Shown here: positions 1 through 64,000 of the stretch, in pieces
Position numbering within the stretch: the stretch's first letter is position 1
Layout of the letters: each line of letters starts with the position of its first letter
Source: Phallusia mammillata
Taxonomy: Eukaryota
Direction of reading: 5' to 3'
NCBI GenBank assembly: GCA_965637545.1
Contig: OZ281495.1
Coordinates: 7,688,001 to 7,752,000, forward strand
Length of the DNA: 64,000 nt
Position numbers and translations under genes: made by a program
Notes under the pieces: model-generated
Seen by the model: the letters and a program-made list of their open reading frames with translations, nothing else
Databases searched by the model: none
What the model was told of the DNA's origin: nothing

Positions 1-60
1 ATACTAAATTTTGGCATACTACGAAGTAAGTGTTTTGTAAATCTTCTTAAGAAAACATAC

Positions 61-470
61 CTATAGTGGAGTTGAGCGAAACAGGAAAGTTGAAAATTCG
101 ATTTACATCTGATCCAAGATCCTATATGGGAAATTACATGGGTTAGTTAGTTATGTATTATACAATCCCAACTGGCATGATTAAAATTCATTTGAAAACA
201 TTAACGAGTGGGTAGGCCTATAGTTTTTGTACTCTCAGTTAACGAATTAGTAAGATATGTCATCAACCCTTGATTACCTGCATCGATAAGGACCAAACTC
301 TTAGGTCAAGACACCTGTAAAAAGCACAGTTGCAGATTAATGCATACATTACCCAACAACACACTTTCTGCTATCTCTTACCTCTCTTTCTCTAACCGCA
401 CTGTAGGTACAGGTATAAAAATGCCCTCCTCGTTGCCACATTTTGTCCAATACGGATATAAATTCGCCAT
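61..470 (-). CDS. Exons 1-3 (470-382, 314-278, 121-61) of a copy whose remaining exons lie left of the window
   Basis: Same sequence and splice signals as exons 1-3 of copy 1, shifted by 3,323 bp. Confidence 0.8.
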
Positions 471-665
471 TTTGACAGAGCATATAAATGCACGTCTGGT
501 TTTTATTTCCATTTTCAGAAAAATACTCAAAAAGTTAAAAGTTACCATGAAACCGATTATTAGGTAGGAGGCAGTGTGACGTCACATTGCCGCATTTATG
601 ACAAATTTTGGCTGACAAATGTTTGCAAGCATCAGTTTGTTGTGTGTTAAGTACTGGCATTAGAG

Positions 666-730
666 CAGTGGTTCTTAACCTGGGAACTCCAGGGATTCGG
701 CAACGCTGATTCAGGGGTTCGACGAAGGTC
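666..730 (+). mobile_element. One end of a hAT (Charlie/Buster-like) non-autonomous element or MITE; partner TIR absent; present in every unit
   Basis: Begins CAGTGGTTCTTAACCT, resembling Charlie/Buster-type TIRs. Subterminal repeats CAGGGATTCG (690-699) and CAGGGGTTCG (712-721). The flanking 8 bp CATTAGAG fit the Buster nnnTAnnn target. No AGGTTAAGAACCACTG found in the unit. Confidence 0.65.
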
Positions 731-1118
731 CTTTGAAGTATAGAAATATTCGTTTTCGTCAAACTTTACGGATCTTTTGTCGCTTATAAGTAGCATTTTT
801 TTTGCTAAATAGAAAAACACTGTACGTTTGTAACTAGGGTTTTGTATCTTTTTTGACGGAACAAAGAACATTGTGTGAATTGTTCGTAGGCAGCAAAAAC
901 TAATTACTTCATGTTTCTATGAAGTTACTAAAAATACGGAATCAAGGCAATCCTGAAACAAGATGCTCGTATTGTGATGTCAGAACTGTGTTACCATTAA
1001 GTTTAGTGAAAAGCCGGTTATTGCGCGCATCTGCCGAGTTCCGCCGCGCGATTTCAACTTGCCATCTCTACGGACGACGAATTATGACGAGATTGGGTTC
1101 TTCCAGATTTCTATTTTC

Positions 1119-1178
1119 AGTGAAACGGGGTTTCACCGCACGGTGCTGCACCGTTTCACTTGCGCACGGCCGTCAGTG
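1119..1178. other. GC-rich cluster of nested inverted repeats and palindromes; present in every unit
   Basis: AGTGAAACGG (1119-1128) pairs with CCGTTTCACT (1151-1160). GTGAAAC-GGG-GTTTCAC at 1120-1136, ACGGTGC-T-GCACCGT at 1140-1154, TGCGCA at 1161-1166, ACGGCCGT at 1166-1173. Confidence 0.85.
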
Positions 1179-1489
1179 TAATTAATTTCCTTTTCGTTTT
1201 GTGAATTCCAAGTCTGTAAAAGACATCAACTCTTAACCTAAAATATCAACAATATCTTACGTACGTGATACCGTTAACTCTTGAGAAATAATGATTCCAC
1301 AGCACTGTTGCCAATTTATCATTTTTTAGCACTACATTTGACATGTTGTCAAGTTATTTAGCATTACAAATGACATCTAGCAACAAGAGTCAGAAGTTAT
1401 GCGAATTGGATTCGAATAAATACTGCGCATATTATGGATCTCAGTCAAATAGTAACAAGAATTTCTACAAAAAAAGCCCGAGTGTATTT

Positions 1490-1495
1490 TTTATT
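1490..1495 (-). terminator. Polyadenylation hexamer AATAAA about 200 nt after the stop codon, followed by a U/GU-rich tract; present in every unit
   Basis: The minus strand reads AATAAAAAATACACTCGGGCTTTTTTTGTAG, the canonical hexamer plus downstream-element layout. Confidence 0.65.
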
Positions 1496-1513
1496 ACGAT
1501 ACAAAGACACAGG

Positions 1514-1521
1514 ATAAAAAA
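1514..1521 (-). promoter_or_regulatory. CPE-like element UUUUUUAU in the predicted 3' UTR, 18 nt upstream of AATAAA
   Basis: Plus-strand ATAAAAAA at 1514-1521 matches UUUUUAU, but it is a short motif in AT-rich DNA. Confidence 0.35.
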
Positions 1522-1697
1522 TGATGCAAAAAGGAAAAAAAAGAGCAAAACAGCAGTGGTGAGATAGTAATACAACAAGAAAAATCATTTTTTCCTTGTT
1601 TGGAAATTGTAGTGTTTGAAAAAAATCCAGTTGAATCGGGTCAGAGCCTTCTAACTCGTCAAGGCAGCCTGTGACGAACAAGTTCCGTTGAATCCGT

Positions 1698-3793
1698 TTA
1701 CGATACACAGCAATTAATCCTAAATCGCTTTCGTTTTTTACGTTTAGGCTTTTTGCTGTCGGAAGCATCTTTCAGTGTGCCATTTTGATCTTGCTCCGGA
1801 GTAACGTCCATTGATTGAATTAGAGAATCTTTCTCGACTTTGCCTTGCGATGCCTTTTCGACATCTTTAGTAGGTTTCTCGTCTATGTGCTTATTTGCAA
1901 GGACTCTATCTTCAAGAGGAACAGTTGATTTAGGTTCTTTAGCCTGAGGTTTGGAATCTACAACTGACAGCTGTGCAATGGGCCAACTCGATTGATTCTC
2001 GTTTCCAATCTTTGGCGTTAATGTGTCTTTTTCTTTTGTCGGTTGCTTGAGAGAATTTTTAGTTTCCAATTCCACCGCAGCAGTGGGCAGTTGACCGATT
2101 GCAGAATTTTGTTTCCTCGATTGATCAGCGATTTGTAGTCTTGATCTGTCTTGACTATTTAATCTGTTTTTCCATCTATGAGGTCGTGGCATGACTGGCC
2201 GACTTACTTGGGGCGTCGCGGCAAAAACAAATACCTCAGTAGTTTGTAACTTTTGTGCAGACAACTTTCGTCTGCGTGGTTTTGGTGGTGGAGTTTGTGT
2301 GCTGGAATTCCGCACTTTGACGTTTTCTGCCAGTGGTAAGACGGAACGTGGAATATCTTGAAATCTGTTTAGGTTAAATTGTTTCGTAAACTTGACAATA
2401 GGGCGAATGTAGGTGGAAATAACAGCAGAGGGCGCCGAAGCTGTATCTTGATCACAGCGTATCGGTGGTCCTCTATGAGTTTGTCCACGTTCAGACAACT
2501 GTGGTTTGCCCCATGTCACTAAGGTTGCACCTCTTAATACATCTGGGTCAACGATTGTAGATTGGTTGTGCACAGGGCATTCTGGAACACATTGTATTTC
2601 TGTTCTCAAGCTGGTGGATGTTTTAGTCGTAGCAGCGTATGGCTTCCAGGGATCAGGCCACCTTAGAACCCTTCGATACGGTTTGCTTGGTAAGGGTATA
2701 GCAGTAACTTGAACAACTTCACTTTGTTGAAGTTTATCCCCTTGAGGCTTCAATCGCGGGGTTTGGGTAGTCGAATCCCTTACAATAACAGCTGTGAGAC
2801 CGACAATGAACTGCGTTTGATTGCTACTGAGTAAGTAATTGACCCGCGTCCATCCCGTGTCATTTGAAAGAACTGAATACATATTTTGCATCCATTCCGG
2901 TTTTACTACAGAAGATATTCGAGCTTTGAAAATTATTTTCCAAACTGCTGCAATCTCTTTCCCGTAAAGACCGGATTCGATGTGGGCTGAAAGCGGGCGA
3001 ATTGGACGCCCTGTTTGGAACAGCACTACATCTCTCGGGTGCAACTTTATATATCTTCTGTCAACCGTCTGTGTCAAGAACCAGCTTCCTTGATTATGAC
3101 TCGCTATGATGCAACCTGTTGAGAAACATTGTTTTTCGAGTTAAATTATTATAATAATCAAATATAAATATAAATGTTAGTTTAGGGATCTGCTTCTTAT
3201 TTCTGAGAATATTTTTCTAACTGTGTTGTACCTTTTATGTTTTTCTTTTCGGGAGAGGATAAAGGACTACGCCCAACTGCGTTTGTTGGATCCTCCAAAT
3301 TGGTTTCTATGTAACAAAGTGAAATACTAAATTTTGGCATACTACGAAGTAAGTGTTTTGTAAATCTTCTTAAGAAAACATACCTATAGTGGAGTTGAGC
3401 GAAACAGGAAAGTTGAAAATTCGATTTACATCTGATCCAAGATCCTATATGGGAAATTACATGGGTTAGTTAGTTATGTATTATACAATCCCAACTGGCA
3501 TGATTAAAATTCATTTGAAAACATTAACGAGTGGGTAGGCCTATAGTTTTTGTACTCTCAGTTAACGAATTAGTAAGATATGTCATCAACCCTTGATTAC
3601 CTGCATCGATAAGGACCAAACTCTTAGGTCAAGACACCTGTAAAAAGCACAGTTGCAGATTAATGCATACATTACCCAACAACACACTTTCTGCTATCTC
3701 TTACCTCTCTTTCTCTAACCGCACTGTAGGTACAGGTATAAAAATGCCCTCCTCGTTGCCACATTTTGTCCAATACGGATATAAATTCGCCAT
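1698..3793 (-). CDS. Copy 1 of a predicted 5-exon gene, 559 aa, unknown family, with C-terminal polybasic tract + CCVS. Exons: 3793-3705, 3637-3601, 3444-3384, 3306-3232, 3115-1698
   Basis: ATG in CAAAATGGCG context. Donors GAG|GTAAGA, CAG|GTAATC, TAG|GTATGT, AAG|GTACAA. Acceptors TTTTTACAG|G, TTTCCCATATAG|G, TTTGTTACATAG|A, TTTCTCAACAG|G. Phases 2/0/1/1 join without stops: 89+37+61+75+1418 = 1680 nt. The N-terminal 100 aa are MANLYPYWTKCGNEEGIFIPVPTVRLEKERCLDLRVWSLSMQDLGSDVNRIFNFPVSLNSTIETNLEDPTNAVGRSPLSSPEKKNIKGCIIASHNQGSWF, followed by the track's 459-aa ORF. This copy carries I92V (ORF numbering; C at 2804). Confidence 0.85.
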
Positions 3794-3897
3794 TTTGACA
3801 GAGCATATAAATGCACGTCTGGTTTTTATTTCCATTTTCAGAAAAATACTCAAAAAGTTAAAAGTTACCATGAAACCGATTATTAGGTAGGAGGCAG

Positions 3898-3909
3898 TGT
3901 GACGTCACA
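3898..3909. promoter_or_regulatory. Perfect 12-bp palindrome TGTGACGTCACA containing a full CRE (TGACGTCA), 105 nt upstream of the ATG; present in every unit (first at 575-586)
   Basis: Read directly from the sequence; TGACGTCA is the CREB/ATF/CREM consensus site. Confidence 0.6.
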
Positions 3910-5020
3910 TTGCCGCATTTATGACAAATTTTGGCTGACAAATGTTTGCAAGCATCAGTTTGTTGTGTGTTAAGTACTGGCATTAGAGCAGTGGTTCTTA
4001 ACCTGGGAACTCCAGGGATTCGGCAACGCTGATTCAGGGGTTCGACGAAGGTCCTTTGAAGTATAGAAATATTCGTTTTCGTCAAACTTTACGGATCTTT
4101 TGTCGCTTATAAGTAGCATTTTTTTTGCTAAATAGAAAAACACTGTACGTTTGTAACTAGGGTTTTGTATCTTTTTTGACGGAACAAAGAACATTGTGTG
4201 AATTGTTCGTAGGCAGCAAAAACTAATTACTTCATGTTTCTATGAAGTTACTAAAAATACGGAATCAAGGCAATCCTGAAACAAGATGCTCGTATTGTGA
4301 TGTCAGAACTGTGTTACCATTAAGTTTAGTGAAAAGCCGGTTATTGCGCGCATCTGCCGAGTTCCGCCGCGCGATTTCAACTTGCCATCTCTACGGACGA
4401 CGAATTATGACGAGATTGGGTTCTTCCAGATTTCTATTTTCAGTGAAACGGGGTTTCACCGCACGGTGCTGCACCGTTTCACTTGCGCACGGCCGTCAGT
4501 GTATTTAATTTCCTTTTCGTTTTGTGAATTCCAAGTCTGTAAAAGACATCAACTCTTAACCTAAAATATCAACAATATCTTGCGTACGTGATACCGTTAA
4601 CTCTTGAGAAATAATGATTCCACAGCACTGTTGCCAATTTATCATTTTTTAGCACTACATTTGACATGTTGTCAAGTTATTTAGCATTACAAATGACATC
4701 TAGCAACAAGAGTCAGAAGTTATGCGAATTGGATTCGAATAAATACTGCGCATATTATGGATCTCAGTCAAATAGTAACAAGAATTTCTACAAAAAAAGC
4801 CCGAGTGTATTTTTTATTACGATACAAAGACACAGGATAAAAAATGATGCAAAAAGGAAAAAAAAGAGCAAAACAGCAGTGGTGAGATAGTAATACAACA
4901 AGAAAAATCATTTTTTCCTTGTTTGGAAATTGTAGTGTTTGAAAAAAATCCAGTTGAATCGGGTCAGAGCCTTCTAACTCGTCAAGGCAGCCTGTGACGA
5001 ACAAGTTCCGTTGAATCCGT

Positions 5021-48683: not shown

Positions 48684-50779
48684 TTACGATACACAGCAAT
48701 TAATCCTAAATCGCTTTCGTTTTTTACGTTTAGGCTTTTTGCTGTCGGAAGCATCTTTCAGTGTGCCATTTTGATCTTGCTCCGGAGTAACGTCCATTGA
48801 TTGAATTAGAGAATCTTTCTCGACTTTGCCTTGCGATGCCTTTTCGACATCTTTAGTAGGTTTCTCGTCTATGTGCTTATTTGCAAGGACTCTATCTTCA
48901 AGAGGAACAGTTGATTTAGGTTCTTTAGCCTGAGGTTTGGAATCTACAACTGACAGCTGTGCAATGGGCCAACTCGATTGATTCTCGTTTCCAATCTTTG
49001 GCGTTAATGTGTCTTTTTCTTTTGTCGGTTGCTTGAGAGAATTTTTAGTTTCCAATTCCACCGCAGCAGTGGGCAGTTGACCGATTGCAGAATGTTGTTT
49101 CCTCGATTGATCAGCGATTTGTAGTCTTGATCTGTCTTGACTATTTAATCTGTTTTTCCATCTATGAGGTCGTGGCATGACTGGCCGACTTACTTGGGGC
49201 GTCGCGGCAAAAACAAATACCTCAGTAGTTTGTAACTTTTGTGCAGACAACTTTCGTCTGCGTGGTTTTGGTGGTGGAGTTTGTGTGCTGGAATTCCGCA
49301 CTTTGACGTTTTCTGCCAGTGGTAAGACGGAACGTGGAATATCTTGAAATCTGTTTAGGTTAAATTGTTTCGTAAACTTGACAATAGGGCGAATGTAGGT
49401 GGAAATAACAGCAGAGGGCGCCGAAGCTGTATCTTGATCACAGCGTATCGGTGGTCCTCTATGAGTTTGTCCACGTTCAGACAACTGTGGTTTGCCCCAT
49501 GTCACTAAGGTTGCACCTCTTAATACATCTGGGTCAACGATTGTAGATTGGTTGTGCACAGGGCATTCTGGAACACATTGTATTTCTGTTCTCAAGCTGG
49601 TGGATGTTTTAGTCGTAGCAGCGTATGGCTTCCAGGGATCAGGCCACCTTAGAACCCTTCGATACGGTTTGCTTGGTAAGGGTATAGCAGTAACTTGAAC
49701 AACTTCACTTTGTTGAAGTTTATCCCCTTGAGGCTTCAATCGCGGGGTTTGGGTAGTCGAATCCCTTACAATAACAGCTGTGAGACCGATAATGAACTGC
49801 GTTTGATTGCTACTGAGTAAGTAATTGACCCGCGTCCATCCCGTGTCATTTGAAAGAACTGAATACATATTTTGCATCCATTCCGGTTTTACTACAGAAG
49901 ATATTCGAGCTTTGAAAATTATTTTCCAAACTGCTGCAATCTCTTTCCCGTAAAGACCGGATTCGATGTGGGCTGAAAGCGGGCGAATTGGACGCCCTGT
50001 TTGGAACAGCACTACATCTCTCGGGTGCAACTTTATATATCTTCTGTCAACCGTCTGTGTCAAGAACCAGCTTCCTTGATTATGACTCGCTATGATGCAA
50101 CCTGTTGAGAAACATTGTTTTTCGAGTTAAATTATCATAATAATCAAATATAAATATAAATGTTAGTTTAGGGATCTGCTTCTTATTTCTGAGAATATTT
50201 TTCTAACTGTGTTGTACCTTTTATGTTTTTCTTTTCGGGAGAGGATAAAGGACTACGCCCAACTGCGTTTGTTGGATCCTCCAAATTGGTTTCTATGTAA
50301 CAAAGTGAAATACTAAATTTTGGCATACTACGAAGTAAGTGTTTTGTAAATCTTCTTAAGAAAACATACCTATAGTGGAGTTGAGCGAAACAGGAAAGTT
50401 GAAAATTCGATTTACATCTGATCCAAGATCCTATATGGGAAATTACATGGGTTAGTTAGTTATGTATTATACAATCCCAACTGGTATGATTAAAATTCAT
50501 TTGAAAACAATAACGAGTGGGTAGGCCTATAGTTTTTGTACTCTCAGTTAACGAATTAGTAAGATATGTCATCAACCCTTGATTACCTGCATCGATAAGG
50601 ACCAAACTCTTAGGTCAAGACACCTGTAAAAAGCACAGTTGCAGATTAATGCATACATTACCCAACAACACACTTTCTGCTGTCTCTTACCTCTCTTTCT
50701 CTAACCGCACTGTAGGTACAGGTATAAAAATGCCCTCCTCGTTGCCACATTTTGTCCAATACGGATATAAATTCGCCAT
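48684..50779 (-). CDS. Copy 15, intact, N324H variant (ORF numbering)
   Basis: ORF 48684-50063 reads KQHSA; G at 49094. Confidence 0.85.
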
Positions 50780-52006
50780 TTTGACAGAGCATATAAATGC
50801 ACGTCTGGTTTTTATTTCCATTTTCAGAAAAATACTCAAAAAGTTAAAAGTTACCATGAAACCGATTATTAGGTAGGAGGCAGTGTGACGTCACATTGCC
50901 GCATTTATGACAAATTTTGGCTGACAAATGTTTGCAAGCATCAGTTTGTTGTGTGTTAAGTACTGGCATTAGAGCAGTGGTTCTTAACCTGGGAACTCCA
51001 GGGATTCGGCAACGCTGATTCAGGGGTTCGACGAAGGTCCTTTGAAGTATAGAAATATTCGTTTTCGTCAAACTTTACGGATCTTTTGTCGCTTATAAGT
51101 AGCATTTTTTTTGCTAAATAGAAAAACACTGTACGTTTGTAACTAGGGTTTTGTATCTTTTTTGACGGAACAAAGAACATTGTGTGAATTGTTCGTAGGC
51201 AGCAAAAACTAATTACTTCATGTTTCTATGAAGTTACTAAAAATACGGAATCAAGGCAATCCTGAAACAAGATGCTCGTATTGTGATGTCAGAACTGTGT
51301 TACCATTAAGTTTAGTGAAAAGCCGGTTATTGCGCGCATCTGCCGAGTTCCGCCGCGCGATTTCAACTTGCCATCTCTACGGACGACGAATTATGACGAG
51401 ATTGGGTTCTTCCAGATTTCTATTTTCAGTGAAACGGGGTTTCACCGCACGGTGCTGCACCGTTTCACTTGCGCACGGCCGTCAGTGTAATTAATTTCCT
51501 TTTCGTTTTGTGAATTCCAAGTCTGTAAAAGACATCAACTCTTAACCTAAAATATCAACAATATCTTACGTACGTGATACCGTTAACTCTTGAGAAATAA
51601 TGATTCCACGGCACTGTTGCCAATTTATCATTTTTTAGCACTACATTTGACATGTTGTCAAGTTATTTAGCATTACAAATGACATCTAGCAACAAGAGTC
51701 AGAAGTTATGCGAATTGGATTCGAATAAATACTGCGCATATTATGGATCTCAGTCAAATAGTAACAAGAATTTCTACAAAAAAAGCCTAAGTGTATTTTT
51801 TATTACGATACAAAGACACAGGATAAAAAATGATGCAAAAAGGAAAAAAAAGAGCAAAACAGCAGTGGTGAGATAGTAATACAACAAGGAAAATCATTTT
51901 TTCCTTGTTTGGAAATTGTAGTGTTTGAAAAAAATCCAGTTGAATCGGGTCAGAGCCTTCTAACTCGTCAAGGCAGCCTGTGACGAACAAGTTCCGTTGA
52001 ATCCGT

Positions 52007-54101
52007 TTACGATACACAGCAATTAATCCTAAATCGCTTTCGTTTTTTACGTTTAGGCTTTTTGCTGTCGGAAGCATCTTTCAGTGTGCCATTTTGATCT
52101 TGCTCCGGAGTAACGTCCATTGATTGAATTAGAGAATCTTTCTCGACTTTGCCTTGCGATGCCTTTTCGACATCTTTAGTAGGTTTCTCGTCTATGTGCT
52201 TATTTGCAAGGACTCTATCTTCAAGAGGAACAGTTGATTTAGGTTCTTTAGCCTGAGGTTTGGAATCTACAACTGACAGCTGTGCAATGGGCCAACTCGA
52301 TTGATTCTCGTTTCCAATCTTTGGCGTTAATGTGTCTTTTTCTTTTGTCGGTTGCTTGAGAGAATTTTTAGTTTCCAATTCCACCGCAGCAGTGGGCAGT
52401 TGACCGATTGCAGAATTTTGTTTCCTCGATTGATCAGCGATTTGTAGTCTTGATCTGTCTTGACTATTTAATCTGTTTTTCCATCTATGAGGTCGTGGCA
52501 TGACTGGCCGACTTACTTGGGGCGTCGCGGCAAAAACAAATACCTCAGTAGTTTGTAACTTTTGTGCAGACAACTTTCGTCTGCGTGGTTTTGGTGGTGG
52601 AGTTTGTGTGCTGGAATTCCGCACTTTGACGTTTTCTGCCAGTGGTAAGACGGAACGTGGAATATCTTGAAATCTGTTTAGGTTAAATTGTTTCGTAAAC
52701 TTGACAATAGGGCGAATGTAGGTGGAAATAACAGCAGAGGGCGCCGAAGCTGTATCTTGATCACAGCGTATCGGTGGTCCTCTATGAGTTTGTCCACGTT
52801 CAGACAACTGTGGTTTGCCCCATGTCACTAAGGTTGCACCTCTTAATACATCTGGGTCAACGATTGTAGATTGGTTGTGCACAGGGCATTCTGGAACACA
52901 TTGTATTTCTGTTCTCAAGCTGGTGGATGTTTTAGTCGTAGCAGCGTATGGCTTCCAGGGATCAGGCCACCTTAGAACACTTCGATACGGTTTGCTTGGT
53001 AAGGGTATAGCAGTAACTTGAACAACTTCACTTTGTTGAAGTTTATCCCCTTGAGGCTTCAATCGCGGGGTTTGGGTAGTCGAATCCCTTACAATAACAG
53101 CTGTGAGACCGATAATGAACTGCGTTTGATTGCTACTGAGTAAGTAATTGACCCGCGTCCATCCCGTGTCATTTGAAAGAACTGAATACATATTTTGCAT
53201 CCATTCCGGTTTTACTACAGAAGATATTCGAGCTTTGAAAATTATTTTCCAAACTGCTGCAATCTCTTTCCCGTAAAGACCGGATTCGATGTGGGCTGAA
53301 AGCGGGCGAATTGGACGCCCTGTTTGGAACAGCACTACATCTCTCGGGTGCAACTTTATATATCTTCTGTCAACCGTCTGTGTCAAGAACCAGCTTCCTT
53401 GATTATGACTCGCTATGATGCAACCTGTTGAGAAACATTGTTTTTCGAGTTAAATTATTATAATAATCAAATATAAATATAAATGTTAGTTTAGGGATCT
53501 GCTTCTTATTTCTGAGAATATTTTTCTAACTGTGTTGTACCTTTTATGTTTTTCTTTTCGGGAGAGGATAAAGGACTACGCCCAACTGCGTTTGTTGGAT
53601 CCTCCAAATTGGTTTCTACGTAACAAAGTGAAATACTAAATTTTGGCATACTACGAAGTAAGTGTTTTGTAAATCTTCTTAAGAAAACATACCTATAGTG
53701 GAGTTGAGCGAAACAGGAAAGTTGAAAATTCGATTTACATCTGATCCAAGATCCTATTTGGGAAATTACATGGGTTAGTTAGTTATGTATTATACAATCC
53801 CAACTGGTATGATTAAAATTCATTTGAAAACAATAACGAGTGGGTAGGCCTATAGTTTTTGTACTCTCAGTTAACGAATTAGTAAGATATGTCATCAACC
53901 CTTGATTACCTGCATCGATAAGGACCAAACTCTTAGGTCAAGACACCTGTAAAAAGCACAGTTACAGATTAATGCATCATTAACCAGCAACACACTTTCT
54001 GCTATCTCTTACCTCTCTTTCTCTAACCGCACTGTAGGTACAGGTATAAAAATGCCCTCCTCGTTGCCACATTTTGTCCAATACGGATATAAATTCGCCA
54101 T
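52007..54101 (-). CDS. Copy 16, intact, R136S variant (ORF numbering), with divergent introns
   Basis: ORF 52007-53386 reads PYRSVL; A at 52979. A net 1-bp deletion in intron 1 moves the ATG to 54101. Splice dinucleotides are intact. Confidence 0.85.
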
Positions 54102-55604
54102 TTTGACAGAGCATATAAATGCACGTCTGGTTTTTGTTTCCATTTTCAGAAAAATACTCAAAAAGTTAAAAGTTACCATGAAACCGATTATTAGGTAGGA
54201 GGCAGTGTGACGTCACATTGCCGCATTTATGACAAATTTTGGCTGACAAATGTTTGCAAGCATCAGTTTGTTGTGTGTTAAGTACTGGCATTAGAGCAGT
54301 GGTTCTTAACCTGGGAACTCCAGGGATTCGGCAACGCTGATTCAGGGGTTCGACGAAGGTCCTTTGAAGTATAGAAATATTCGTTTTCGTCAAACTTTAC
54401 GGATCTTTTGTCGCTTATAAGTAGCATTTTTTTTTGCTAAATAGAAAAACACTGTACGTTTGTAACTAGGGTTTTGTATCTTTTTTGACGGAACAAAGAA
54501 CATTGTGTGCATTGTTCGTAGGCAGCAAAAACCAATTACTTCATGTTTCTATACAGTTACCAAAAATACACTGCCTAATTTTGATAAAATACTGAAACAC
54601 GCCGGAATCAAAGCAATCCTAAAACAAGATGCTCGTATTGTGATGTCAGAACTGTGTTACCATTAAGTTTAGTGAAAAGCCGGTTATTGCGCGCATCTGC
54701 CGAGTTCCGCCGCGCGATTTCAACTTGCCATCTCTACGGACGACGAATTATGACGAGATTGGGTTCTTCCAGATTTCTATTTTCAGTGAAACGGGGTTTC
54801 ACCGCACGGTGCTGCACCGTTTCACTTGCGCACGGCCGTCAGTGTAATTAATTTCCTTTTCGTTTTGTGAATTCCAAGTCTGTAAAAGACATCAACTCTT
54901 AACCTAAAATATCAACAATATCTTACGTACGTGATACCGTTAACTCTTGAGAAATAATGATTCCACAGCACTGTTGCCAATTTATCATTTTTTAGCACTA
55001 CATTTGACATGTTGTCAAGTTATTTAGCATTACAAATGACATCTAGCAACAAGAGTCAGAAGTTATGCGAATTGGATTCGAATAAATACTGCGCATATTA
55101 TGGATCTCAGTCAAATAGTAACAAGAATTTCTACAAAAAAAGCCCGAGTGTATTTTTTATTACGATACAAAGACACAGGATAAAAAATGATGCAAAAAGG
55201 AAAAAAAAGAGCAAAACAGCAGTGGTGAGATAGTAATACAACAAGAAAAATCATTTTTTCCTTGTTTGGAAATTGTAGTGTTTGAAAAAAATCCAGTTGA
55301 ATCGGGTCAGAGCCTTCTAACTCGTCAAGGCAGCCTGTGACGAACAAGTTCCGTTGAATCCGTTTACGATACACAGCAATTAATCCTAAATCGCTTTCGT
55401 TTTTTACGTTTAGGCTTTTTGCTGTCGGAAGCATCTTTCAGTGTGCCATTTTGATCTTGCTCCGGAGTAACGTCCATTGATTGAATTAGAGAATCTTTCT
55501 CGACTTTGCCTTGCGATGCCTTTTCGACATCTTTAGTAGGTTTCTCGTCTATGTGCTTATTTGCAAGGACTCTATCTTCAAGAGGAACAGTTGATTTAGG
55601 TTCT

Positions 55605-57460
55605 TTAGCCTGAGGTTTGGAATCTACAACTGACAGCTGTGCAATGGGCCAACTCGATTGATTCTCGTTTCCAATCTTTGGCGTTAATGTGTCTTTTTCT
55701 TTTGTCGGTTTGCTTGAGAGAATTTTTAGTTTCCAATTCCACCGCAGCAGTGGGCAGTTGACCGATTGCAGAATTTTGTTTCCTCGATTGATCAGCGATT
55801 TGTAGTCTTGATCTGTCTTGACTATTTAATCTGTTTTTCCATCTATGAGGTCGTGGCATGACTGGCCGACTTACTTGGGGCGTCGCGGCAAAAACAAATA
55901 CCTCAGTAGTTTGTAACTTTTGTGCAGACAACTTTCGTCTGCGTGGTTTTGGTGGTGGAGTTTGTGTGCTGGAATTCCGCACTTTGACGTTTTCTGCCAG
56001 TGGTAAGACGGAACGTGGAATATCTTGAAATCTGTTTAGGTTAAATTGTTTCGTAAACTTGACAATAGGGCGAATGTAGGTGGAAATAACAGCAGAGGGC
56101 GCCGAAGCTGTATCTTGATCACAGCGTATCGGTGGTCCTCTATGAGTTTGTCCACGTTCAGACAACTGTGGTTTGCCCCATGTCACTAAGGTTGCACCTC
56201 TTAATACATCTGGGTCAACGATTGTAGATTGGTTGTGCACAGGGCATTCTGGAACACATTGTATTTCTGTTCTCAAGCTGGTGGATGTTTTAGTCGTAGC
56301 AGCGTATGGCTTCCAGGGATCAGGCCACCTTAGAACCCTTCGATACGGTTTGCTTGGTAAGGGTATAGCAGTAACTTGAACAACTTCACTTTGTTGAAGT
56401 TTATCCCCTTGAGGCTTCAATCGCGGGGTTTGGGTAGTCGAATCCCTTACAATAACAGCTGTGAGACCGATAATGAACTGCGTTTGATTGCTACTGAGTA
56501 AGTAATTGACCCGCGTCCATCCCGTGTCATTTGAAAGAACTGAATACATATTTTGCATCCATTCCGGTTTTACTACAGAAGATATTCGAGCTTTGAAAAT
56601 TATTTTCCAAACTGCTGCAATCTCTTTCCCGTAAAGACCGGATTCGATGTGGGCTGAAAGCGGGCGAATTGGACGCCCTGTTTGGAACAGCACTACATCT
56701 CTCGGGTGCAACTTTATATATCTTCTGTCAACCGTCTGTGTCAAGAACCAGCTTCCTTGATTATGACTCGCTATGATGCAACCTGTTGAGAAACATTGTT
56801 TTTCGAGTTAAATTATTATAATAATCAAATATAAATATAAATGTTAGTTTAGGGATCTGCTTCTTATTTCTGAGAATATTTTTCTAACTGTGTTGTACCT
56901 TTTATGTTTTTCTTTTCGGGAGAGGATAAAGGACTACGCCCAACTGCGTTTGTTGGATCCTCCAAATTGGTTTCTATGTAACAAAGTGAAATACTAAATT
57001 TTGGCATACTACGAAGTAAGTGTTTTGTAAATCTTCTTAAGAAAACATACCTATAGTGGAGTTGAGCGAAACAGGAAAGTTGAAAATTCGATTTACATCT
57101 GATCCAAGATCCTATATGGGAAATTACATGGGTTAGTTAGTTATGTATTATACAATCCCAACTGGCATGATTAAAATTCATTTGAAAACATTAACGAGTG
57201 GGTAGGCCTATACTTTTTGTACTCTCAGTTAACGAATTAGTAAGATATGTCATCAACCCTTGATTACCTGCATCGATAAGGACCAAACTCTTAGGTCAAG
57301 ACACCTGTAAAAAGCACAGTTGCAGATTAATGCATACATTACCCAACAACACACTTTCTGCTATCTCTTACCTCTCTTTCTCTAACCGCACTGTAGGTAC
57401 AGGTATAAAAATGCCCTCCTCGTTGCCACATTTTGTCCAATACGGATATAAATTCGCCAT
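55605..57460 (-). pseudogene. Copy 17, same +1 frameshift as copy 14 (extra T at 55709-55711)
   Basis: 379-aa ORF at 55605-56744 is identical to the one at 45600-46739. Confidence 0.7.
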
Positions 57461-58688
57461 TTTGACAGAGCATATAAATGCACGTCTGGTTTTTATTTCC
57501 ATTTTCAGAAAAATACTCAAAAAGTTAAAAGTTACCATGAAACCGATTATTAGGTAGGAGGCAGTGTGACGTCACATTGCCGCATTTATGACAAATTTTG
57601 GCTGACAAATGTTTGCAAGCATCAGTTTGTTGTGTGTTAAGTACTGGCATTAGAGCAGTGGTTCTTAACCTGGGAACTCCAGGGATTCGGCAACGCTGAT
57701 TCAGGGGTTCGACGAAGGTCCTTTGAAGTATAGAAATATTCGTTTTCGTCAAACTTTACGGATCTTTTGTCGCTTATAAGTAGCATTTTTTTTTGCTAAA
57801 TAGAAAAACACTGTACGTTTGTAACTAGGGTTTTGTATCTTTTTTGACGGAACAAAGAACATTGTGTGAATTGTTCGTAGGCAGCAAAAACTAATTACTT
57901 CATGTTTCTATGAAGTTACTAAAAATACGGAATCAAGGCAATCCTGAAACAAGATGCTCGTATTGTGATGTCAGAACTGTGTTACCATTAAGTTTAGTGA
58001 AAAGCCGGTTATTGCGCGCATCTGCCGAGTTCCGCCGCGCGATTTCAACTTGCCATCTCTACGGACGACGAATTATGACGAGATTGGGTTCTTCCAGATT
58101 TCTATTTTCAGTGAAACGGGGTTTCACCGCACGGTGCTGCACCGTTTCACTTGCGCACGGCCGTCAGTGTAATTAATTTCCTTTTCGTTTTGTGAATTCC
58201 AAGTCTGTAAAAGACATCAACTCTTAACCTAAAATATCAACAATATCTTACGTACGTGATACCGTTAACTCTTGAGAAATAATGATTCCACAGCACTGTT
58301 GCCAATTTATCATTTTTTAGCACTACATTTGACATGTTGTCAAGTTATTTAGCATTACAAATGACATCTAGCAACAAGAGTCAGAAGTTATGCGAATTGG
58401 ATTCGAATAAATACTGCGCATATTATGGATCTCAGTCAAATAGTAACAAGAATTTCTACAAAAAAAGCCCGAGTGTATTTTTTATTACGATACAAAGACA
58501 CAGGATAAAAAATGATGCAAAAAGGAAAAAAAAGAGCAAAACAGCAGTGGTGAGATAGTAATACAACAAGAAAAATCATTTTTTCCTTGTTTGGAAATTG
58601 TAGTGTTTGAAAAAAATCCAGTTGAATCGGGTCAGAGCCTTCTAACTCGTCAAGGCAGCCTGTGACGAACAAGTTCCGTTGAATCCGT

Positions 58689-60784
58689 TTACGATACACA
58701 GCAATTAATCCTAAATCGCTTTCGTTTTTTACGTTTAGGCTTTTTGCTGTCGGAAGCATCTTTCAGTGTGCCATTTTGATCTTGCTCCGGAGTAACGTCC
58801 ATTGATTGAATTAGAGAATCTTTCTCGACTTTGCCTTGCGATGCCTTTTCGACATCTTTAGTAGGTTTCTCGTCTATGTGCTTATTTGCAAGGACTCTAT
58901 CTTCAAGAGGAACAGTTGATTTAGGTTCTTTAGCCTGAGGTTTGGAATCTACAACTGACAGCTGTGCAATGGGCCAACTCGATTGATTCTCGTTTCCAAT
59001 CTTTGGCGTTAATGTGTCTTTTTCTTTTGTCGGTTGCTTGAGAGAATTTTTAGTTTCCAATTCCACCGCAGCAGTGGGCAGTTGACCGATTGCAGAATGT
59101 TGTTTCCTCGATTGATCAGCGATTTGTAGTCTTGATCTGTCTTGACTATTTAATCTGTTTTTCCATCTATGAGGTCGTGGCATGACTGGCCGACTTACTT
59201 GGGGCGTCGCGGCAAAAACAAATACCTCAGTAGTTTGTAACTTTTGTGCAGACAACTTTCGTCTGCGTGGTTTTGGTGGTGGAGTTTGTGTGCTGGAATT
59301 CCGCACTTTGACGTTTTCTGCCAGTGGTAAGACGGAACGTGGAATATCTTGAAATCTGTTTAGGTTAAATTGTTTCGTAAACTTGACAATAGGGCGAATG
59401 TAGGTGGAAATAACAGCAGAGGGCGCCGAAGCTGTATCTTGATCACAGCGTATCGGTGGTCCTCTATGAGTTTGTCCACGTTCAGACAACTGTGGTTTGC
59501 CCCATGTCACTAAGGTTGCACCTCTTAATACATCTGGGTCAACGATTGTAGATTGGTTGTGCACAGGGCATTCTGGAACACATTGTATTTCTGTTCTCAA
59601 GCTGGTGGATGTTTTAGTCGTAGCAGCGTATGGCTTCCAGGGATCAGGCCACCTTAGAACCCTTCGATACGGTTTGCTTGGTAAGGGTATAGCAGTAACT
59701 TGAACAACTTCACTTTGTTGAAGTTTATCCCCTTGAGGCTTCAATCGCGGGGTTTGGGTAGTCGAATCCCTTACAATAACAGCTGTGAGACCGATAATGA
59801 ACTGCGTTTGATTGCTACTGAGTAAGTAATTGACCCGCGTCCATCCCGTGTCATTTGAAAGAACTGAATACATATTTTGCATCCATTCCGGTTTTACTAC
59901 AGAAGATATTCGAGCTTTGAAAATTATTTTCCAAACTGCTGCAATCTCTTTCCCGTAAAGACCGGATTCGATGTGGGCTGAAAGCGGGCGAATTGGACGC
60001 CCTGTTTGGAACAGCACTACATCTCTCGGGTGCAACTTTATATATCTTCTGTCAACCGTCTGTGTCAAGAACCAGCTTCCTTGATTATGACTCGCTATGA
60101 TGCAACCTGTTGAGAAACATTGTTTTTCGAGTTAAATTATCATAATAATCAAATATAAATATAAATGTTAGTTTAGGGATCTGCTTCTTATTTCTGAGAA
60201 TATTTTTCTAACTGTGTTGTACCTTTTATGTTTTTCTTTTCGGGAGAGGATAAAGGACTACGCCCAACTGCGTTTGTTGGATCCTCCAAATTGGTTTCTA
60301 TGTAACAAAGTGAAATACTAAATTTTGGCATACTACGAAGTAAGTGTTTTGTAAATCTTCTTAAGAAAACATACCTATAGTGGAGTTGAGCGAAACAGGA
60401 AAGTTGAAAATTCGATTTACATCTGATCCAAGATCCTATATGGGAAATTACATGGGTTAGTTAGTTATGTATTATACAATCCCAACTGGTATGATTAAAA
60501 TTCATTTGAAAACAATAACGAGTGGGTAGGCCTATAGTTTTTGTACTCTCAGTTAACGAATTAGTAAGATATGTCATCAACCCTTGATTACCTGCATCGA
60601 TAAGGACCAAACTCTTAGGTCAAGACACCTGTAAAAAGCACAGTTGCAGATTAATGCATACATTACCCAACAACACACTTTCTGCTGTCTCTTACCTCTC
60701 TTTCTCTAACCGCACTGTAGGTACAGGTATAAAAATGCCCTCCTCGTTGCCACATTTTGTCCAATACGGATATAAATTCGCCAT
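58689..60784 (-). CDS. Copy 18, intact, N324H variant
   Basis: ORF 58689-60068; G at 59099 (49094+10005). Confidence 0.85.
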
Positions 60785-62011
60785 TTTGACAGAGCATATA
60801 AATGCACGTCTGGTTTTTATTTCCATTTTCAGAAAAATACTCAAAAAGTTAAAAGTTACCATGAAACCGATTATTAGGTAGGAGGCAGTGTGACGTCACA
60901 TTGCCGCATTTATGACAAATTTTGGCTGACAAATGTTTGCAAGCATCAGTTTGTTGTGTGTTAAGTACTGGCATTAGAGCAGTGGTTCTTAACCTGGGAA
61001 CTCCAGGGATTCGGCAACGCTGATTCAGGGGTTCGACGAAGGTCCTTTGAAGTATAGAAATATTCGTTTTCGTCAAACTTTACGGATCTTTTGTCGCTTA
61101 TAAGTAGCATTTTTTTTGCTAAATAGAAAAACACTGTACGTTTGTAACTAGGGTTTTGTATCTTTTTTGACGGAACAAAGAACATTGTGTGAATTGTTCG
61201 TAGGCAGCAAAAACTAATTACTTCATGTTTCTATGAAGTTACTAAAAATACGGAATCAAGGCAATCCTGAAACAAGATGCTCGTATTGTGATGTCAGAAC
61301 TGTGTTACCATTAAGTTTAGTGAAAAGCCGGTTATTGCGCGCATCTGCCGAGTTCCGCCGCGCGATTTCAACTTGCCATCTCTACGGACGACGAATTATG
61401 ACGAGATTGGGTTCTTCCAGATTTCTATTTTCAGTGAAACGGGGTTTCACCGCACGGTGCTGCACCGTTTCACTTGCGCACGGCCGTCAGTGTAATTAAT
61501 TTCCTTTTCGTTTTGTGAATTCCAAGTCTGTAAAAGACATCAACTCTTAACCTAAAATATCAACAATATCTTACGTACGTGATACCGTTAACTCTTGAGA
61601 AATAATGATTCCACGGCACTGTTGCCAATTTATCATTTTTTAGCACTACATTTGACATGTTGTCAAGTTATTTAGCATTACAAATGACATCTAGCAACAA
61701 GAGTCAGAAGTTATGCGAATTGGATTCGAATAAATACTGCGCATATTATGGATCTCAGTCAAATAGTAACAAGAATTTCTACAAAAAAAGCCTAAGTGTA
61801 TTTTTTATTACGATACAAAGACACAGGATAAAAAATGATGCAAAAAGGAAAAAAAAGAGCAAAACAGCAGTGGTGAGATAGTAATACAACAAGGAAAATC
61901 ATTTTTTCCTTGTTTGGAAATTGTAGTGTTTGAAAAAAATCCAGTTGAATCGGGTCAGAGCCTTCTAACTCGTCAAGGCAGCCTGTGACGAACAAGTTCC
62001 GTTGAATCCGT

Positions 62012-63951
62012 TTACGATACACAGCAATTAATCCTAAATCGCTTTCGTTTTTTACGTTTAGGCTTTTTGCTGTCGGAAGCATCTTTCAGTGTGCCATTTT
62101 GATCTTGCTCCGGAGTAACGTCCATTGATTGAATTAGAGAATCTTTCTCGACTTTGCCTTGCGATGCCTTTTCGACATCTTTAGTAGGTTTCTCGTCTAT
62201 GTGCTTATTTGCAAGGACTCTATCTTCAAGAGGAACAGTTGATTTAGGTTCTTTAGCCTGAGGTTTGGAATCTACAACTGACAGCTGTGCAATGGGCCAA
62301 CTCGATTGATTCTCGTTTCCAATCTTTGGCGTTAATGTGTCTTTTTCTTTTGTCGGTTGCTTGAGAGAATTTTTAGTTTCCAATTCCACCGCAGCAGTGG
62401 GCAGTTGACCGATTGCAGAATTTTGTTTCCTCGATTGATCAGCGATTTGTAGTCTTGATCTGTCTTGACTATTTAATCTGTTTTTCCATCTATGAGGTCG
62501 TGGCATGACTGGCCGACTTACTTGGGGCGTCGCGGCAAAAACAAATACCTCAGTAGTTTGTAACTTTTGTGCAGACAACTTTCGTCTGCGTGGTTTTGGT
62601 GGTGGAGTTTGTGTGCTGGAATTCCGCACTTTGACGTTTTCTGCCAGTGGTAAGACGGAACGTGGAATATCTTGAAATCTGTTTAGGTTAAATTGTTTCG
62701 TAAACTTGACAATAGGGCGAATGTAGGTGGAAATAACAGCAGAGGGCGCCGAAGCTGTATCTTGATCACAGCGTATCGGTGGTCCTCTATGAGTTTGTCC
62801 ACGTTCAGACAACTGTGGTTTGCCCCATGTCACTAAGGTTGCACCTCTTAATACATCTGGGTCAACGATTGTAGATTGGTTGTGCACAGGGCATTCTGGA
62901 ACACATTGTATTTCTGTTCTCAAGCTGGTGGATGTTTTAGTCGTAGCAGCGTATGGCTTCCAGGGATCAGGCCACCTTAGAACACTTCGATACGGTTTGC
63001 TTGGTAAGGGTATAGCAGTAACTTGAACAACTTCACTTTGTTGAAGTTTATCCCCTTGAGGCTTCAATCGCGGGGTTTGGGTAGTCGAATCCCTTACAAT
63101 AACAGCTGTGAGACCGATAATGAACTGCGTTTGATTGCTACTGAGTAAGTAATTGACCCGCGTCCATCCCGTGTCATTTGAAAGAACTGAATACATATTT
63201 TGCATCCATTCCGGTTTTACTACAGAAGATATTCGAGCTTTGAAAATTATTTTCCAAACTGCTGCAATCTCTTTCCCGTAAAGACCGGATTCGATGTGGG
63301 CTGAAAGCGGGCGAATTGGACGCCCTGTTTGGAACAGCACTACATCTCTCGGGTGCAACTTTATATATCTTCTGTCAACCGTCTGTGTCAAGAACCAGCT
63401 TCCTTGATTATGACTCGCTATGATGCAACCTGTTGAGAAACATTGTTTTTCGAGTTAAATTATTATAATAATCAAATATAAATATAAATGTTAGTTTAGG
63501 GATCTGCTTCTTATTTCTGAGAATATTTTTCTAACTGTGTTGTACCTTTTATGTTTTTCTTTTCGGGAGAGGATAAAGGACTACGCCCAACTGCGTTTGT
63601 TGGATCCTCCAAATTGGTTTCTACGTAACAAAGTGAAATACTAAATTTTGGCATACTACGAAGTAAGTGTTTTGTAAATCTTCTTAAGAAAACATACCTA
63701 TAGTGGAGTTGAGCGAAACAGGAAAGTTGAAAATTCGATTTACATCTGATCCAAGATCCTATTTGGGAAATTACATGGGTTAGTTAGTTATGTATTATAC
63801 AATCCCAACTGGTATGATTAAAATTCATTTGAAAACAATAACGAGTGGGTAGGCCTATAGTTTTTGTACTCTCAGTTAACGAATTAGTAAGATATGTCAT
63901 CAACCCTTGATTACCTGCATCGATAAGGACCAAACTCTTAGGTCAAGACAC
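62012..63951 (-). CDS. Copy 19, exons 2-5 intact, R136S variant; exon 1 lies beyond the window end
   Basis: ORF 62012-63391; A at 62984 (52979+10005); exon 2 at 63915-63951. Confidence 0.8.
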
Positions 63952-64000
63952 CTGTAAAAAGCACAGTTACAGATTAATGCATCATTAACCAGCAACACAC

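What the first reader, a model, noticed from the sequence alone, without database searches (positions are those of the whole stretch)
1..64000. Gene-bearing 3.3-kb macrosatellite: at least 14 complete intact copies of one orphan gene, nearly identical
Seen: every unit holds a complete gene with its own promoter motif and poly(A) signal; 14 copies are complete and intact and 3 are frameshifted. Known: homogenised tandem arrays usually encode high-demand products (rDNA, histones, snRNA) or germline and conflict genes (Stellate, Sly/Slx type). None of the housekeeping classes is present here. Inference: this is a dosage-amplified, lineage-specific gene, possibly germline or drive related.
Basis: partly seen in the sequence, partly recalled or inferred. 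Interest (0 to 1): 0.8.

Follow-up and report, generated by a model that had tools for sequence, protein, structure and literature searches.

The report
Sea-squirt orphan gene repeated in tandem
A sea-squirt chromosome carries at least 23, and probably 30 to 70, almost identical head-to-tail copies of a 3.3-kb unit, each holding one complete gene of a family seen only in this genome; the array and gene are real, but I found no sign that the copies are switched on.

Summary
The window is one tandem array with a 3,323-bp period: 19 full units, mostly differing at 0-14 positions. The assembled array spans C2:7,678,578-7,755,930, about 23 units.

Each unit holds a five-exon, 559-aa gene on the minus strand. 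It has a conserved promoter with a CRE about 113 bp before the ATG and an AATAAA 203 nt after the stop. Of 18 whole gene copies, 14 are intact, 3 are frameshifted and 1 holds the N gap.

The gap flanks overlap by 263 bp in unit phase. The sequence is therefore not continuous there, and an unknown number of units is missing.

Contig depth in two DNA runs is 30-70 times that of paralog contigs, so the array is not over-assembled. Three runs show the tandem junction.

No outside relative turned up, but the genome holds three intact 79%-identical paralogs (dN/dS 0.52-0.62) and three at 30% identity. All share two LC8-type TQT motifs and a polybasic CCVS or CCVQ prenylation end.

Expression is not shown, since no RNA run holds the gene. 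Variation inside the array shows no constraint. The germline or drive reading is untested. The scan noted other orphan-gene arrays in this genome, but of other families.

The parts
1..64000 (-). Tandem array of the 3,323-bp unit: 19 full units plus a partial one. The assembled array runs beyond both window ends (C2:7,678,578-7,755,930).
1..3323 (.). One repeat unit in the phase chosen here. Gene segment = unit 1217-3323 plus 1-664; spacer = unit 665-1216.
3705..3793 (-). Exon 1 of gene copy 1 (ATG at 3793). It is the best conserved exon, 53% identical even in the 30%-identity paralogs.
3601..3637 (-). Exon 2
3384..3444 (-). Exon 3
3232..3306 (-). Exon 4
1698..3115 (-). Exon 5 (472 codons plus stop).
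3794..3987 (-). Promoter and 5' block of about 190 bp, conserved in all family members. Homology with paralogs stops at the spacer boundary.
3900..3907 (.). Palindromic CRE (TGACGTCA), about 113 bp upstream of the ATG. It sits at the same distance in the three 30%-identity paralogs.
3864..3873 (-). Conserved TCATGGTAAC. It matches an RFX X-box at 13 of 14 positions, judged by eye against a consensus I recalled; a lead only.
   Evidence: consensus from my own knowledge
1490..1495 (-). AATAAA poly(A) signal 203 nt after the stop; at +201 to +204 in three paralogs.
2757..2780 (-). First LC8-type motif, RDSTTQTP. The TQT is invariant in all 7 aligned family members.
2289..2312 (-). Second LC8-type motif, RNSSTQTP. 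TQTPPPKP is invariant in all 7 members.
1698..1757 (-). Polybasic tract plus CCVS CaaX-type end and stop. The 30%-identity paralogs end in CCVQ.
666..1014 (+). Copy of a dispersed short repeat inside the spacer. The genome holds at least 30 copies at 73-88% identity. It starts exactly where gene homology ends.
1015..1216 (.). Rest of the spacer. It is G+C-rich and has no match elsewhere in the genome search.
32763..32962 (.). Assembly gap inside exon 5 of gene copy 10. The flanks overlap by 263 bp of unit phase (2594-2856), so they are not continuous. Left unfilled.
14508..17281 (-). Gene copy 5, frameshifted by one extra base in exon 5 (near 15775), with a stop at codon 302.
44878..47652 (-). 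Gene copy 14, frameshifted by one extra base in exon 5 (near 45703), with a stop at codon 480.
54849..57657 (-). Gene copy 17, with the same frameshift as copy 14.
43662..63637 (.). Two copies of a three-unit higher-order repeat of about 10 kb. Units 15 and 18 are identical, as are 16 and 19; units 14 and 17 share the frameshift.

Best explanation
SHOWN. This is a real macrosatellite made by tandem duplication and kept uniform by unequal crossing-over or gene conversion. Its core units are at least 99.6% alike, while the edge units are decayed: the last right-hand unit is 96-97% identical and frameshifted, and a relic on the left is 90% identical. Right-hand units still carry variants of the edge type, and a three-unit block has been re-duplicated. 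Each unit is a transcription-competent copy of a five-exon gene with its full conserved promoter and poly(A) signal, plus a 552-bp spacer that begins with a dispersed short repeat. The gene belongs to a family found only in this genome. That family comprises three intact paralogs at 79% identity, three intact ones at 30%, and several pseudogenes. INFERRED from sequence. The 559-aa protein is basic (pI 9.9). It has a small N-terminal domain followed by about 360 mostly disordered residues. Two invariant TQT motifs fit the published preferences for binding the dimeric hub protein LC8 (dynein light chain). The protein ends in a polybasic tract and CCVS or CCVQ, a farnesylation-type signal with a second cysteine that could be palmitoylated. 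I therefore read it as a lipid-anchored, LC8-cross-linked adaptor on a membrane (plasma membrane or nuclear envelope; the basic tract would also fit a nuclear import signal), driven by a CRE-dependent promoter. LEAST SECURE. I lean to the view that the amplification raises dosage of this adaptor in a restricted tissue or stage that the indexed RNA runs do not sample.
For: Array structure. Array edges, edge decay and shared edge-type variants. Not over-assembled: array contigs have word depth about 4,370 (X8) and about 14,000 (X14), against 74-135 and 207-420 for paralog contigs. A joint that 'goes back 3201 with 122 letters between' (3201 + 122 = 3323) appears in three runs, and read proportions at the polymorphic sites 1181, 1259 and 3546 match the assembly. 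Gene model. Paralogs keep all splice sites and the frame, with indels in threes. dN/dS is 0.52-0.62, with bootstrap upper bounds of 0.68-0.75. The TQT motifs and the C-terminal signal are invariant across paralogs at 30% identity. The motif flanks (Asp/Asn/Glu at -4, a small residue at -2, mostly Pro at +2 (Ala or Ser in the first motif of the distant paralogs), no proline before the anchor) fit the rules in PMC6607443. The promoter, with the CRE at about -113, is conserved more strongly than the protein. AATAAA is conserved in position. Composition and pI.
Against: No RNA run in the index holds the gene, and five RNA-like runs of this species hold none of its sampled words. Other follow-ups did get RNA evidence for other genes of this genome. 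Variants that arose inside the array look neutral. In 1,680 bp of coding sequence there are 2 non-synonymous changes and 2 frameshifts, with no synonymous change. In 1,643 bp of non-coding sequence there are 9 events. One frameshifted unit was re-amplified rather than purged. The array abuts a 195-bp satellite. The N-terminal domain could not be modelled with confidence (pLDDT 33 and 50). LC8 binding and prenylation rest on motifs alone.
Confidence: 0.45

Rival explanations
1. Passenger amplification. A functional family member happened to lie where unequal crossing-over expanded a repeat next to satellite DNA. The copies are uniform only because the array is young or constantly homogenised, they are silent or nearly so, and they give no dosage benefit.
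For: No RNA holder was found. Variants that arose inside the array show no coding constraint, and a frameshifted unit was re-amplified. The edge copy is already a pseudogene. A 195-bp satellite lies next to the array. The family forms tandem clusters that decay, as in the C1:10.10-10.12 Mb cluster where every copy has stops.
Against: Every unit keeps the whole conserved promoter and the 3' end. Fourteen of the 17 copies that can be judged are intact. Array-internal divergence is too low (about 0.1%) to tell neutrality from constraint. The RNA negative covers only indexed runs of unknown tissues.
Confidence: 0.4
2. Assembly artefact: one or a few copies were over-expanded by the assembler.
For: Units are nearly identical, and an assembly gap lies inside the array.
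Against: Depth in two independent short-read contig sets is 30-70 times that of paralog contigs. The tandem junction is recovered in three runs. Polymorphic sites occur in the reads in the same proportions as in the assembly. The units carry structured variants and a higher-order repeat. If anything, the gap hides further units.
Confidence: 0.02
3. Germline conflict or meiotic-drive amplicon of the Stellate or Sly/Slx type.
For: Only the general resemblance: a homogenised array of a fast-evolving, lineage-specific gene with dN/dS near 0.55.
Against: No second amplified homologous array that could act as antagonist was found in the genome. Earlier notes of the scan take the genome for a sea squirt, and sea squirts are hermaphrodites without sex chromosomes (my own knowledge). 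No expression data.
Confidence: 0.03
4. The gene is cargo of, or derived from, a transposable element or virus, and the array is a tandem element insertion.
For: Dispersed paralogs lie on four chromosomes, and homology to the array ends sharply at unit 664/665 and 1216/1217.
Against: The paralogs' homology to one another runs beyond those points and for different lengths, so the sharp ends belong to the array's own spacer and not to a mobile unit. No Pfam domain was found. The gene has a five-exon host-like structure with a conserved promoter.
Confidence: 0.03

Closest known systems
Human D4Z4 macrosatellite (3.3-kb unit, DUX4 ORF in each unit)
   Same: A tandem array of about 3.3-kb units, tens of copies, very high identity between units, a complete open reading frame in every unit, and no expression detected in the available RNA data.
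   Different: No sequence relation. Here each unit holds a five-exon gene with its own poly(A) signal and 39% G+C. DUX4 is an intronless homeobox ORF in G+C-rich DNA, with a poly(A) signal only distal to the last unit. Epigenetic state was not examined here.
Ampliconic germline gene arrays (TSPY, CT47, GAGE; mouse Sly/Slx; Drosophila Stellate)
   Same: Homogenised multi-copy arrays of fast-evolving, lineage-restricted protein genes, with pseudogene copies interspersed.
   Different: Those arrays are sex-linked and testis-expressed. Here the linkage group is presumably an autosome of a hermaphrodite, expression is unknown and no antagonist array exists.
Polybasic-CaaX lipid anchors (K-Ras4B; PRL/PTP4A phosphatases ending in CCIQ, CCVQ or CCVM)
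   Same: A run of Lys/Arg directly before a C-terminal Cys-Cys-aliphatic-Ser/Gln box, conserved across the family.
   Different: The rest of the protein is neither a GTPase nor a phosphatase (no Pfam hit). Prenylation was not tested.
Multivalent LC8 (DYNLL) clients such as Bim, ASCIZ and KANK1
   Same: TQT-anchored 8-residue motifs in a disordered region. The first resembles Bim's DKSTQTP, and two sites per chain would favour LC8-bridged dimers.
   Different: There is no homology to any known client, and binding was not tested.
Other tandem arrays of orphan genes noted by this scan in the same genome (s1-364012, s1-368982)
   Same: The same genome, with tens of head-to-tail copies of tunicate-restricted genes of unknown fold.
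   Different: By their notes, those arrays hold diverged copies that swap segments in a birth-and-death pattern. This array is 99.6-100% uniform and belongs to another family. I did not examine those loci.

Membership tests
Gene-bearing macrosatellite | Head-to-tail units of 1 kb or more, in many copies | tested here: met
   3,323-bp period, 19 full units in the window and about 23 in the assembly. Depth is 30-70 times that of paralog contigs.
Gene-bearing macrosatellite | Units kept nearly identical (concerted evolution), with diverged edge units | tested here: met
   Core units differ at 0-14 positions. The right edge unit is 96-97% identical and the left relic 90%.
Gene-bearing macrosatellite | A complete gene or ORF in each unit | tested here: met
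   Five exons, promoter and poly(A) signal lie within one period; 14 of 18 copies are intact.
Gene-bearing macrosatellite | Copy number varies among individuals | not tested
   Only contig depths of two runs from one study were compared.
Dosage-amplified gene (CUP1, antifreeze or histone type) | Copies are transcribed and output scales with copy number | tested here: inconclusive
   No RNA run holds the gene.
Housekeeping arrays (rDNA, 5S, snRNA, tRNA, histones) | Unit encodes one of these products | tested here: not met
   No Rfam match, no tRNA, no Pfam domain.
Sex-linked conflict amplicons (Stellate, Sly/Slx) | A homologous antagonist array, or sex-chromosome linkage | tested here: not met
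   The own-genome protein search finds only this array plus dispersed single copies and one decayed cluster. Sex linkage is not applicable if the animal is a hermaphroditic sea squirt (not verified by me).
LC8 (DYNLL) client | TQT anchor in a disordered stretch with permissive flanks (-4 able to H-bond, small -2, strand-breaking +2, no proline before the anchor) | tested here: met
   RDSTTQTP and RNSSTQTP. TQT is invariant in 7 paralogs. Rules are from PMC6607443. LC8Pred itself was not run.
LC8 (DYNLL) client | Physical binding to LC8 | not testable with these tools
   Needs ITC or pull-down.
CaaX-prenylated protein | Cys at -4, aliphatic residue at -2, and Ser/Gln/Met/Ala at the last position for farnesyltransferase | tested here: met
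   The array subfamily ends in CCVS and the distant paralogs in CCVQ, both preceded by a KRKKR tract. The enzyme rule is from my own knowledge.
CaaX-prenylated protein | A lipid is actually attached | not testable with these tools
   Needs a labelling or localisation experiment.

The most novel reading that the evidence does not exclude
A tunicate-restricted family of farnesyl-anchored, LC8-cross-linked membrane adaptors exists. One member has been blown up into a 25-70-copy, concertedly evolving macrosatellite that is silent in most tissues and fires from its CRE promoter in a narrow germline or early-embryo window. That would be a tunicate counterpart of D4Z4/DUX4-type or cancer-testis-type arrays, in an animal without sex chromosomes.
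Probability: 0.2. Interest if true: 0.65.

Novelty: new member of a known kind. Interest (0 to 1): 0.45.

Why it matters
Homogeneous arrays that carry a whole protein gene in each unit are well studied in mammals and flies. There they are tied to sex chromosomes, germline expression and disease. I found no description of one in a tunicate. If the copies are expressed, this array gives a tractable case in an electroporatable chordate for three questions: how such arrays are regulated, whether amplification without sex-chromosome conflict is adaptive, and what a protein combining two LC8 sites with a lipid anchor does. If the copies are silent, the array is a clean example of a functional gene being swept into satellite-like dynamics. 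The family's 190-bp promoter is conserved more strongly than its protein, which makes it a ready-made reporter construct.

Tried and rejected
- **Tandem Repeats Finder:** it found nothing, because its longest period is 500. K-mer offsets were used instead.
- **Outside relatives:** none in Pfam (array copy and four paralogs), Rfam, tRNA scan, PDB sequence profile (only a chance match at E = 0.84) or ESM Atlas features.
- **Protein searches:** the word search with one sequence, the word search with a 7-sequence profile and the exhaustive phmmer over 1.84 billion representatives all found no hit.
- **Structure prediction:** exon 5 with 4 sequences gave pLDDT 33 (42). Its first 115 residues with 7 sequences gave pLDDT 50 (74). 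Both are too poor for a fold search, so none was run.
- **Joined protein left out:** the five-exon protein has no reference, so I did not search or fold it, as the operators ask. Exons 1-4 (87 residues, probably part of the N-terminal domain) were therefore never searched or folded. They were joined only inside scripts, to check the frame and to compute dN/dS.
- **Internal duplication:** the 'old internal duplication' (s1-408761) got no self-BLAST support at E up to 1 (73). The two TQT motifs are real.
- **Mobile-unit idea:** rejected, because the paralog flanks continue to align with one another beyond the array's breakpoints.
- **Constraint inside the array:** the raw contrast of 3 coding against 26 non-coding substitutions looked like purifying selection. 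It dissolved once 19 of the 26 proved to be states shared with the old edge units, that is, recombinant tracts.
- **TATA box:** the TATA-like TTTATAT lies only 13-20 nt before the ATG, so it cannot serve as a canonical TATA box for that start.
- **Literature:** searches for a described tunicate macrosatellite found none.
Full report
**Observation**

The window is G000:C2:7,688,001-7,752,000 of a 240-Mb assembly. Successive identical 20-mers lie 3,323 bp apart in about 39,000 cases. A 30-base anchor recurs 20 times at 3,322-3,324-bp steps. There are two exceptions: 3,358 for unit 17, and 3,786 for the unit that holds the gap. An alignment of the 19 full units shows 0-14 differences between most pairs. 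Unit 17 differs at about 52 positions, mostly through a 35-bp insertion. Units 15 and 18 are identical, as are 16 and 19, and units 14 and 17 share a frameshift. The right end is therefore a re-duplicated three-unit block of 10,005 bp.

**The gap**

The letters left of the N run end at unit coordinate 2856. Those to its right restart at 2594. The two sides thus repeat 263 bp of exon 5, so they are neither continuous nor in frame. The gap joins two contig ends inside the array, and the number of missing units is unknown. I did not fill it, and I count gene copy 10 as not assessable.

**Extent and edges**

Sampling the chromosome around the window puts the assembled array at C2:7,678,578-7,755,930, about 77 kb or 23 units.
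- The last right-hand unit is only 96-97% identical. It carries a 1-bp deletion in exon 5 and stops at unit coordinate 937.
- On the left the array starts at unit coordinate 547, directly after a 313-bp relic of the gene's 3' end at 90% identity.
- Units 16, 17 and 19 share many variant states with the diverged edge units.

A uniform core, decayed edges and a gradient of old variants are what unequal crossing-over produces. An assembler that copied one unit would not produce them.

**Is the array real?**

Four public contig sets were laid on window:1100-4300.
- In two DNA sets of the same species, error-free array contigs have word depths of about 4,170-4,390 (X8) and 13,600-14,300 (X14). Contigs that match at 85-90% identity, the dispersed paralogs, have depths of 74-135 and 207-420.
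- The ratio is 30-70. Depending on whether the paralog contigs stand for one or both haplotypes, this means roughly 20-50 units per haplotype. The assembly's 23 units are therefore right or too few.
- A joint that 'goes back 3201 with 122 letters between' (3201 + 122 = 3323) appears in X8, X14 and X17, the last labelled as another organism.
- The two alleles at window sites 1181, 1259 and 3546 occur in the reads in about the same proportions as among the assembled units.
- The tool warns that contig depth is not a copy number, so I use it only as an order of magnitude.

**The gene**

On the minus strand, five exons with GT-AG introns at all four junctions give a 1,680-nt frame of 559 codons. 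In copy 1 the exons are 3793-3705, 3637-3601, 3444-3384, 3306-3232 and 3115-1698. This agrees with note s1-408611. Of the 18 copies wholly inside the window, 14 are intact. Copy 5 has one extra base, copies 14 and 17 share another extra base, and copy 10 holds the gap. Neither frameshift lies in a long homopolymer. One of them is shared by two units of the higher-order repeat, so the frameshifts are probably real.

**Family**

The unit's DNA finds dispersed relatives at 72-87% identity on C1, C4 and C6. They cover unit 1217-3323 and then 1-664 without a break. The unit is therefore a 2,771-bp gene segment plus a 552-bp spacer.
- **Close paralogs:** three of them (C4:21.73 Mb, C4:22.20 Mb, C6:16.15 Mb) keep every splice site and an open frame of 552-562 codons. 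All indels come in threes.
- **Selection:** dN/dS against the array copy is 0.52-0.62, and none of 200 bootstraps reached 1. The gene codes for protein and evolves fast under relaxed constraint.
- **Broken copies:** C4:10.39 Mb (87%, the nearest relative), C1:25.13 Mb and a cluster at C1:10.10-10.12 Mb are broken.
- **Distant paralogs:** a protein search of the genome also found three intact members at about 30% identity, on C8 at 6.88 Mb and on C2 at 10.10 and 23.42 Mb.

**No relatives elsewhere**

All of the following were blank: the exhaustive phmmer search of 1.84 billion representatives, two word-index searches, one of them with a 7-sequence profile, Pfam, a profile search of PDB sequences and the Atlas. 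'Orphan' therefore holds outside this genome, as far as these libraries reach. Earlier notes of the scan take the genome for a sea squirt. I did not verify this.

**What the protein looks like**

The protein is basic (pI 9.9). Its first 200 residues have ordinary hydrophobicity, and the remaining 359 are strongly polar. Across the 30%-identity paralogs the invariant columns cluster in four places:
- a block in the N-terminal part;
- TQT at residues 204-206;
- TQTPPPKP at residues 360-367;
- a KRKKR tract followed by I-x-C-C-V-S/Q at the very end.

The two motifs read RDSTTQTP and RNSSTQTP. The published analysis of LC8 motifs (PMC6607443) names these preferences: a TQT anchor, an H-bonding residue (often Asp) at -4, no bulky residue at -2, Pro/Asp/Glu at +2, and no proline before the anchor. 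The array copy's two motifs meet all of these. In the paralogs the -4 residue is Asp, Asn or Glu; their +2 is Pro at the second motif but Ala or Ser at the first motif of the distant paralogs. The tail, ending RKRFRINCCVS, is a polybasic CaaX box of the farnesyl type. PRL phosphatases end in the same way (my own knowledge). The basic run could also serve as a nuclear import signal. Both AlphaFold runs were of low confidence (pLDDT 33 and 50), so no fold search was made.

As the operators ask, I searched and folded exon 5 by reference only. The joined five-exon protein was neither searched nor folded. Exons 1-4, which probably belong to the N-terminal domain, were left out of those steps.

**Promoter and 3' end**

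The 190 bp before the ATG are better conserved than the protein. All family members, including the 30%-identity ones, have TGACGTCA about 113 bp before the ATG. They also share TTGTCACAAAT, TCATGGTAAC and a CAAAATG start context. TCATGGTAAC with its flank matches the RFX X-box at 13 of 14 positions. I judged this by eye against a recalled consensus, so it is a lead and not a finding. AATAAA lies 203 nt after the stop, and at +201 to +204 in three paralogs. The TATA-like TTTATAT, however, lies too close to the ATG to act as a TATA box.

**Spacer**

Unit 666 to about 1014 is one copy of a short dispersed repeat, with at least 30 copies at 73-88% identity. It begins exactly where the gene's homology to its paralogs ends. 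Beyond that point the paralogs go on aligning with one another. The break is therefore a feature of this locus and not the end of a mobile unit.

**Is the amplification used?**

This stays open.
- **For:** every unit is complete, with the whole conserved promoter.
- **Against, RNA:** no RNA run in the index holds the gene. Five RNA-like runs of the species hold none of its sampled words. Other follow-ups did obtain RNA support for other genes of this genome.
- **Against, variation:** the raw contrast was 3 coding against 26 non-coding substitutions. It is misleading, because 19 of the 26 are states shared with the old edge units.
- **Variants that arose in the array:** four coding events (2 non-synonymous, 2 frameshifts, none synonymous) stand against nine non-coding events in equal lengths of sequence. 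This shows no constraint, though at 0.1% divergence none would be visible anyway.

I lean slightly towards a dosage role in an unsampled tissue or stage (0.45), against a silent passenger array (0.40).

**Comparison and verdict**

This works like a gene-bearing macrosatellite of the D4Z4, TSPY or CT47 kind, and it meets the structural criteria I could test. It is not a housekeeping array. It has no antagonist array of the Stellate or Sly/Slx kind. The array is a new member of a known kind. The protein family is undescribed as far as I could search, and its proposed mechanism rests on motifs. Interest is moderate.

Noticed in passing
L023:4100-10000 (G000:C2:7,756,100 to at least 7,772,500): A satellite with a 195-bp period (also 389 and 585) starts directly after the array's last partial unit and runs for 16-26 kb. 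A solitary 100-bp fragment of it lies in the left flank at L021:5382-5483.
   Followed up: partly
window 666-1014 in every unit; copies in L035-L042: A short dispersed repeat that starts with CAGTGGTTCTTAACC and has a GGGGTTCGA box about 45 nt further on. This could be a pol III A/B-box head of a SINE. At least 30 copies lie on all large chromosomes.
   Followed up: partly
L021:8272-8583 (G000:C2:7,678,272-7,678,583): A 313-bp relic of the gene's 3' end at 90% identity is fused to unit coordinate 547 of the first array unit. It looks like the remnant of an older resident copy, cut by a deletion.
   Followed up: partly
L029-L031 (G000:C1:10,101,001-10,124,000): A second, old tandem cluster of the same family: five or more fragments at 46-88% identity, all with stops. 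The family has formed arrays before, and they decayed.
   Followed up: partly
L021:6500-7510, minus strand: An intronless 336-aa ORF with several hydrophobic segments, possibly a seven-helix receptor, lies 0.8 kb left of the array. Leucine-rich-repeat exons lie at L021:1301-2272.
   Followed up: no
window 2886 (run X7, labelled organism B): A 1,441-letter contig follows the unit up to window 2886 and then continues for 157 letters unlike the unit. This may be a structural variant or a junction of the array in another sample.
   Followed up: no
L032, L033, L034: The three 30%-identity family members have only about 50-60 residues between the two TQT motifs, against 156 in the array subfamily. 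The array subfamily therefore gained about 100 residues there.
   Followed up: partly
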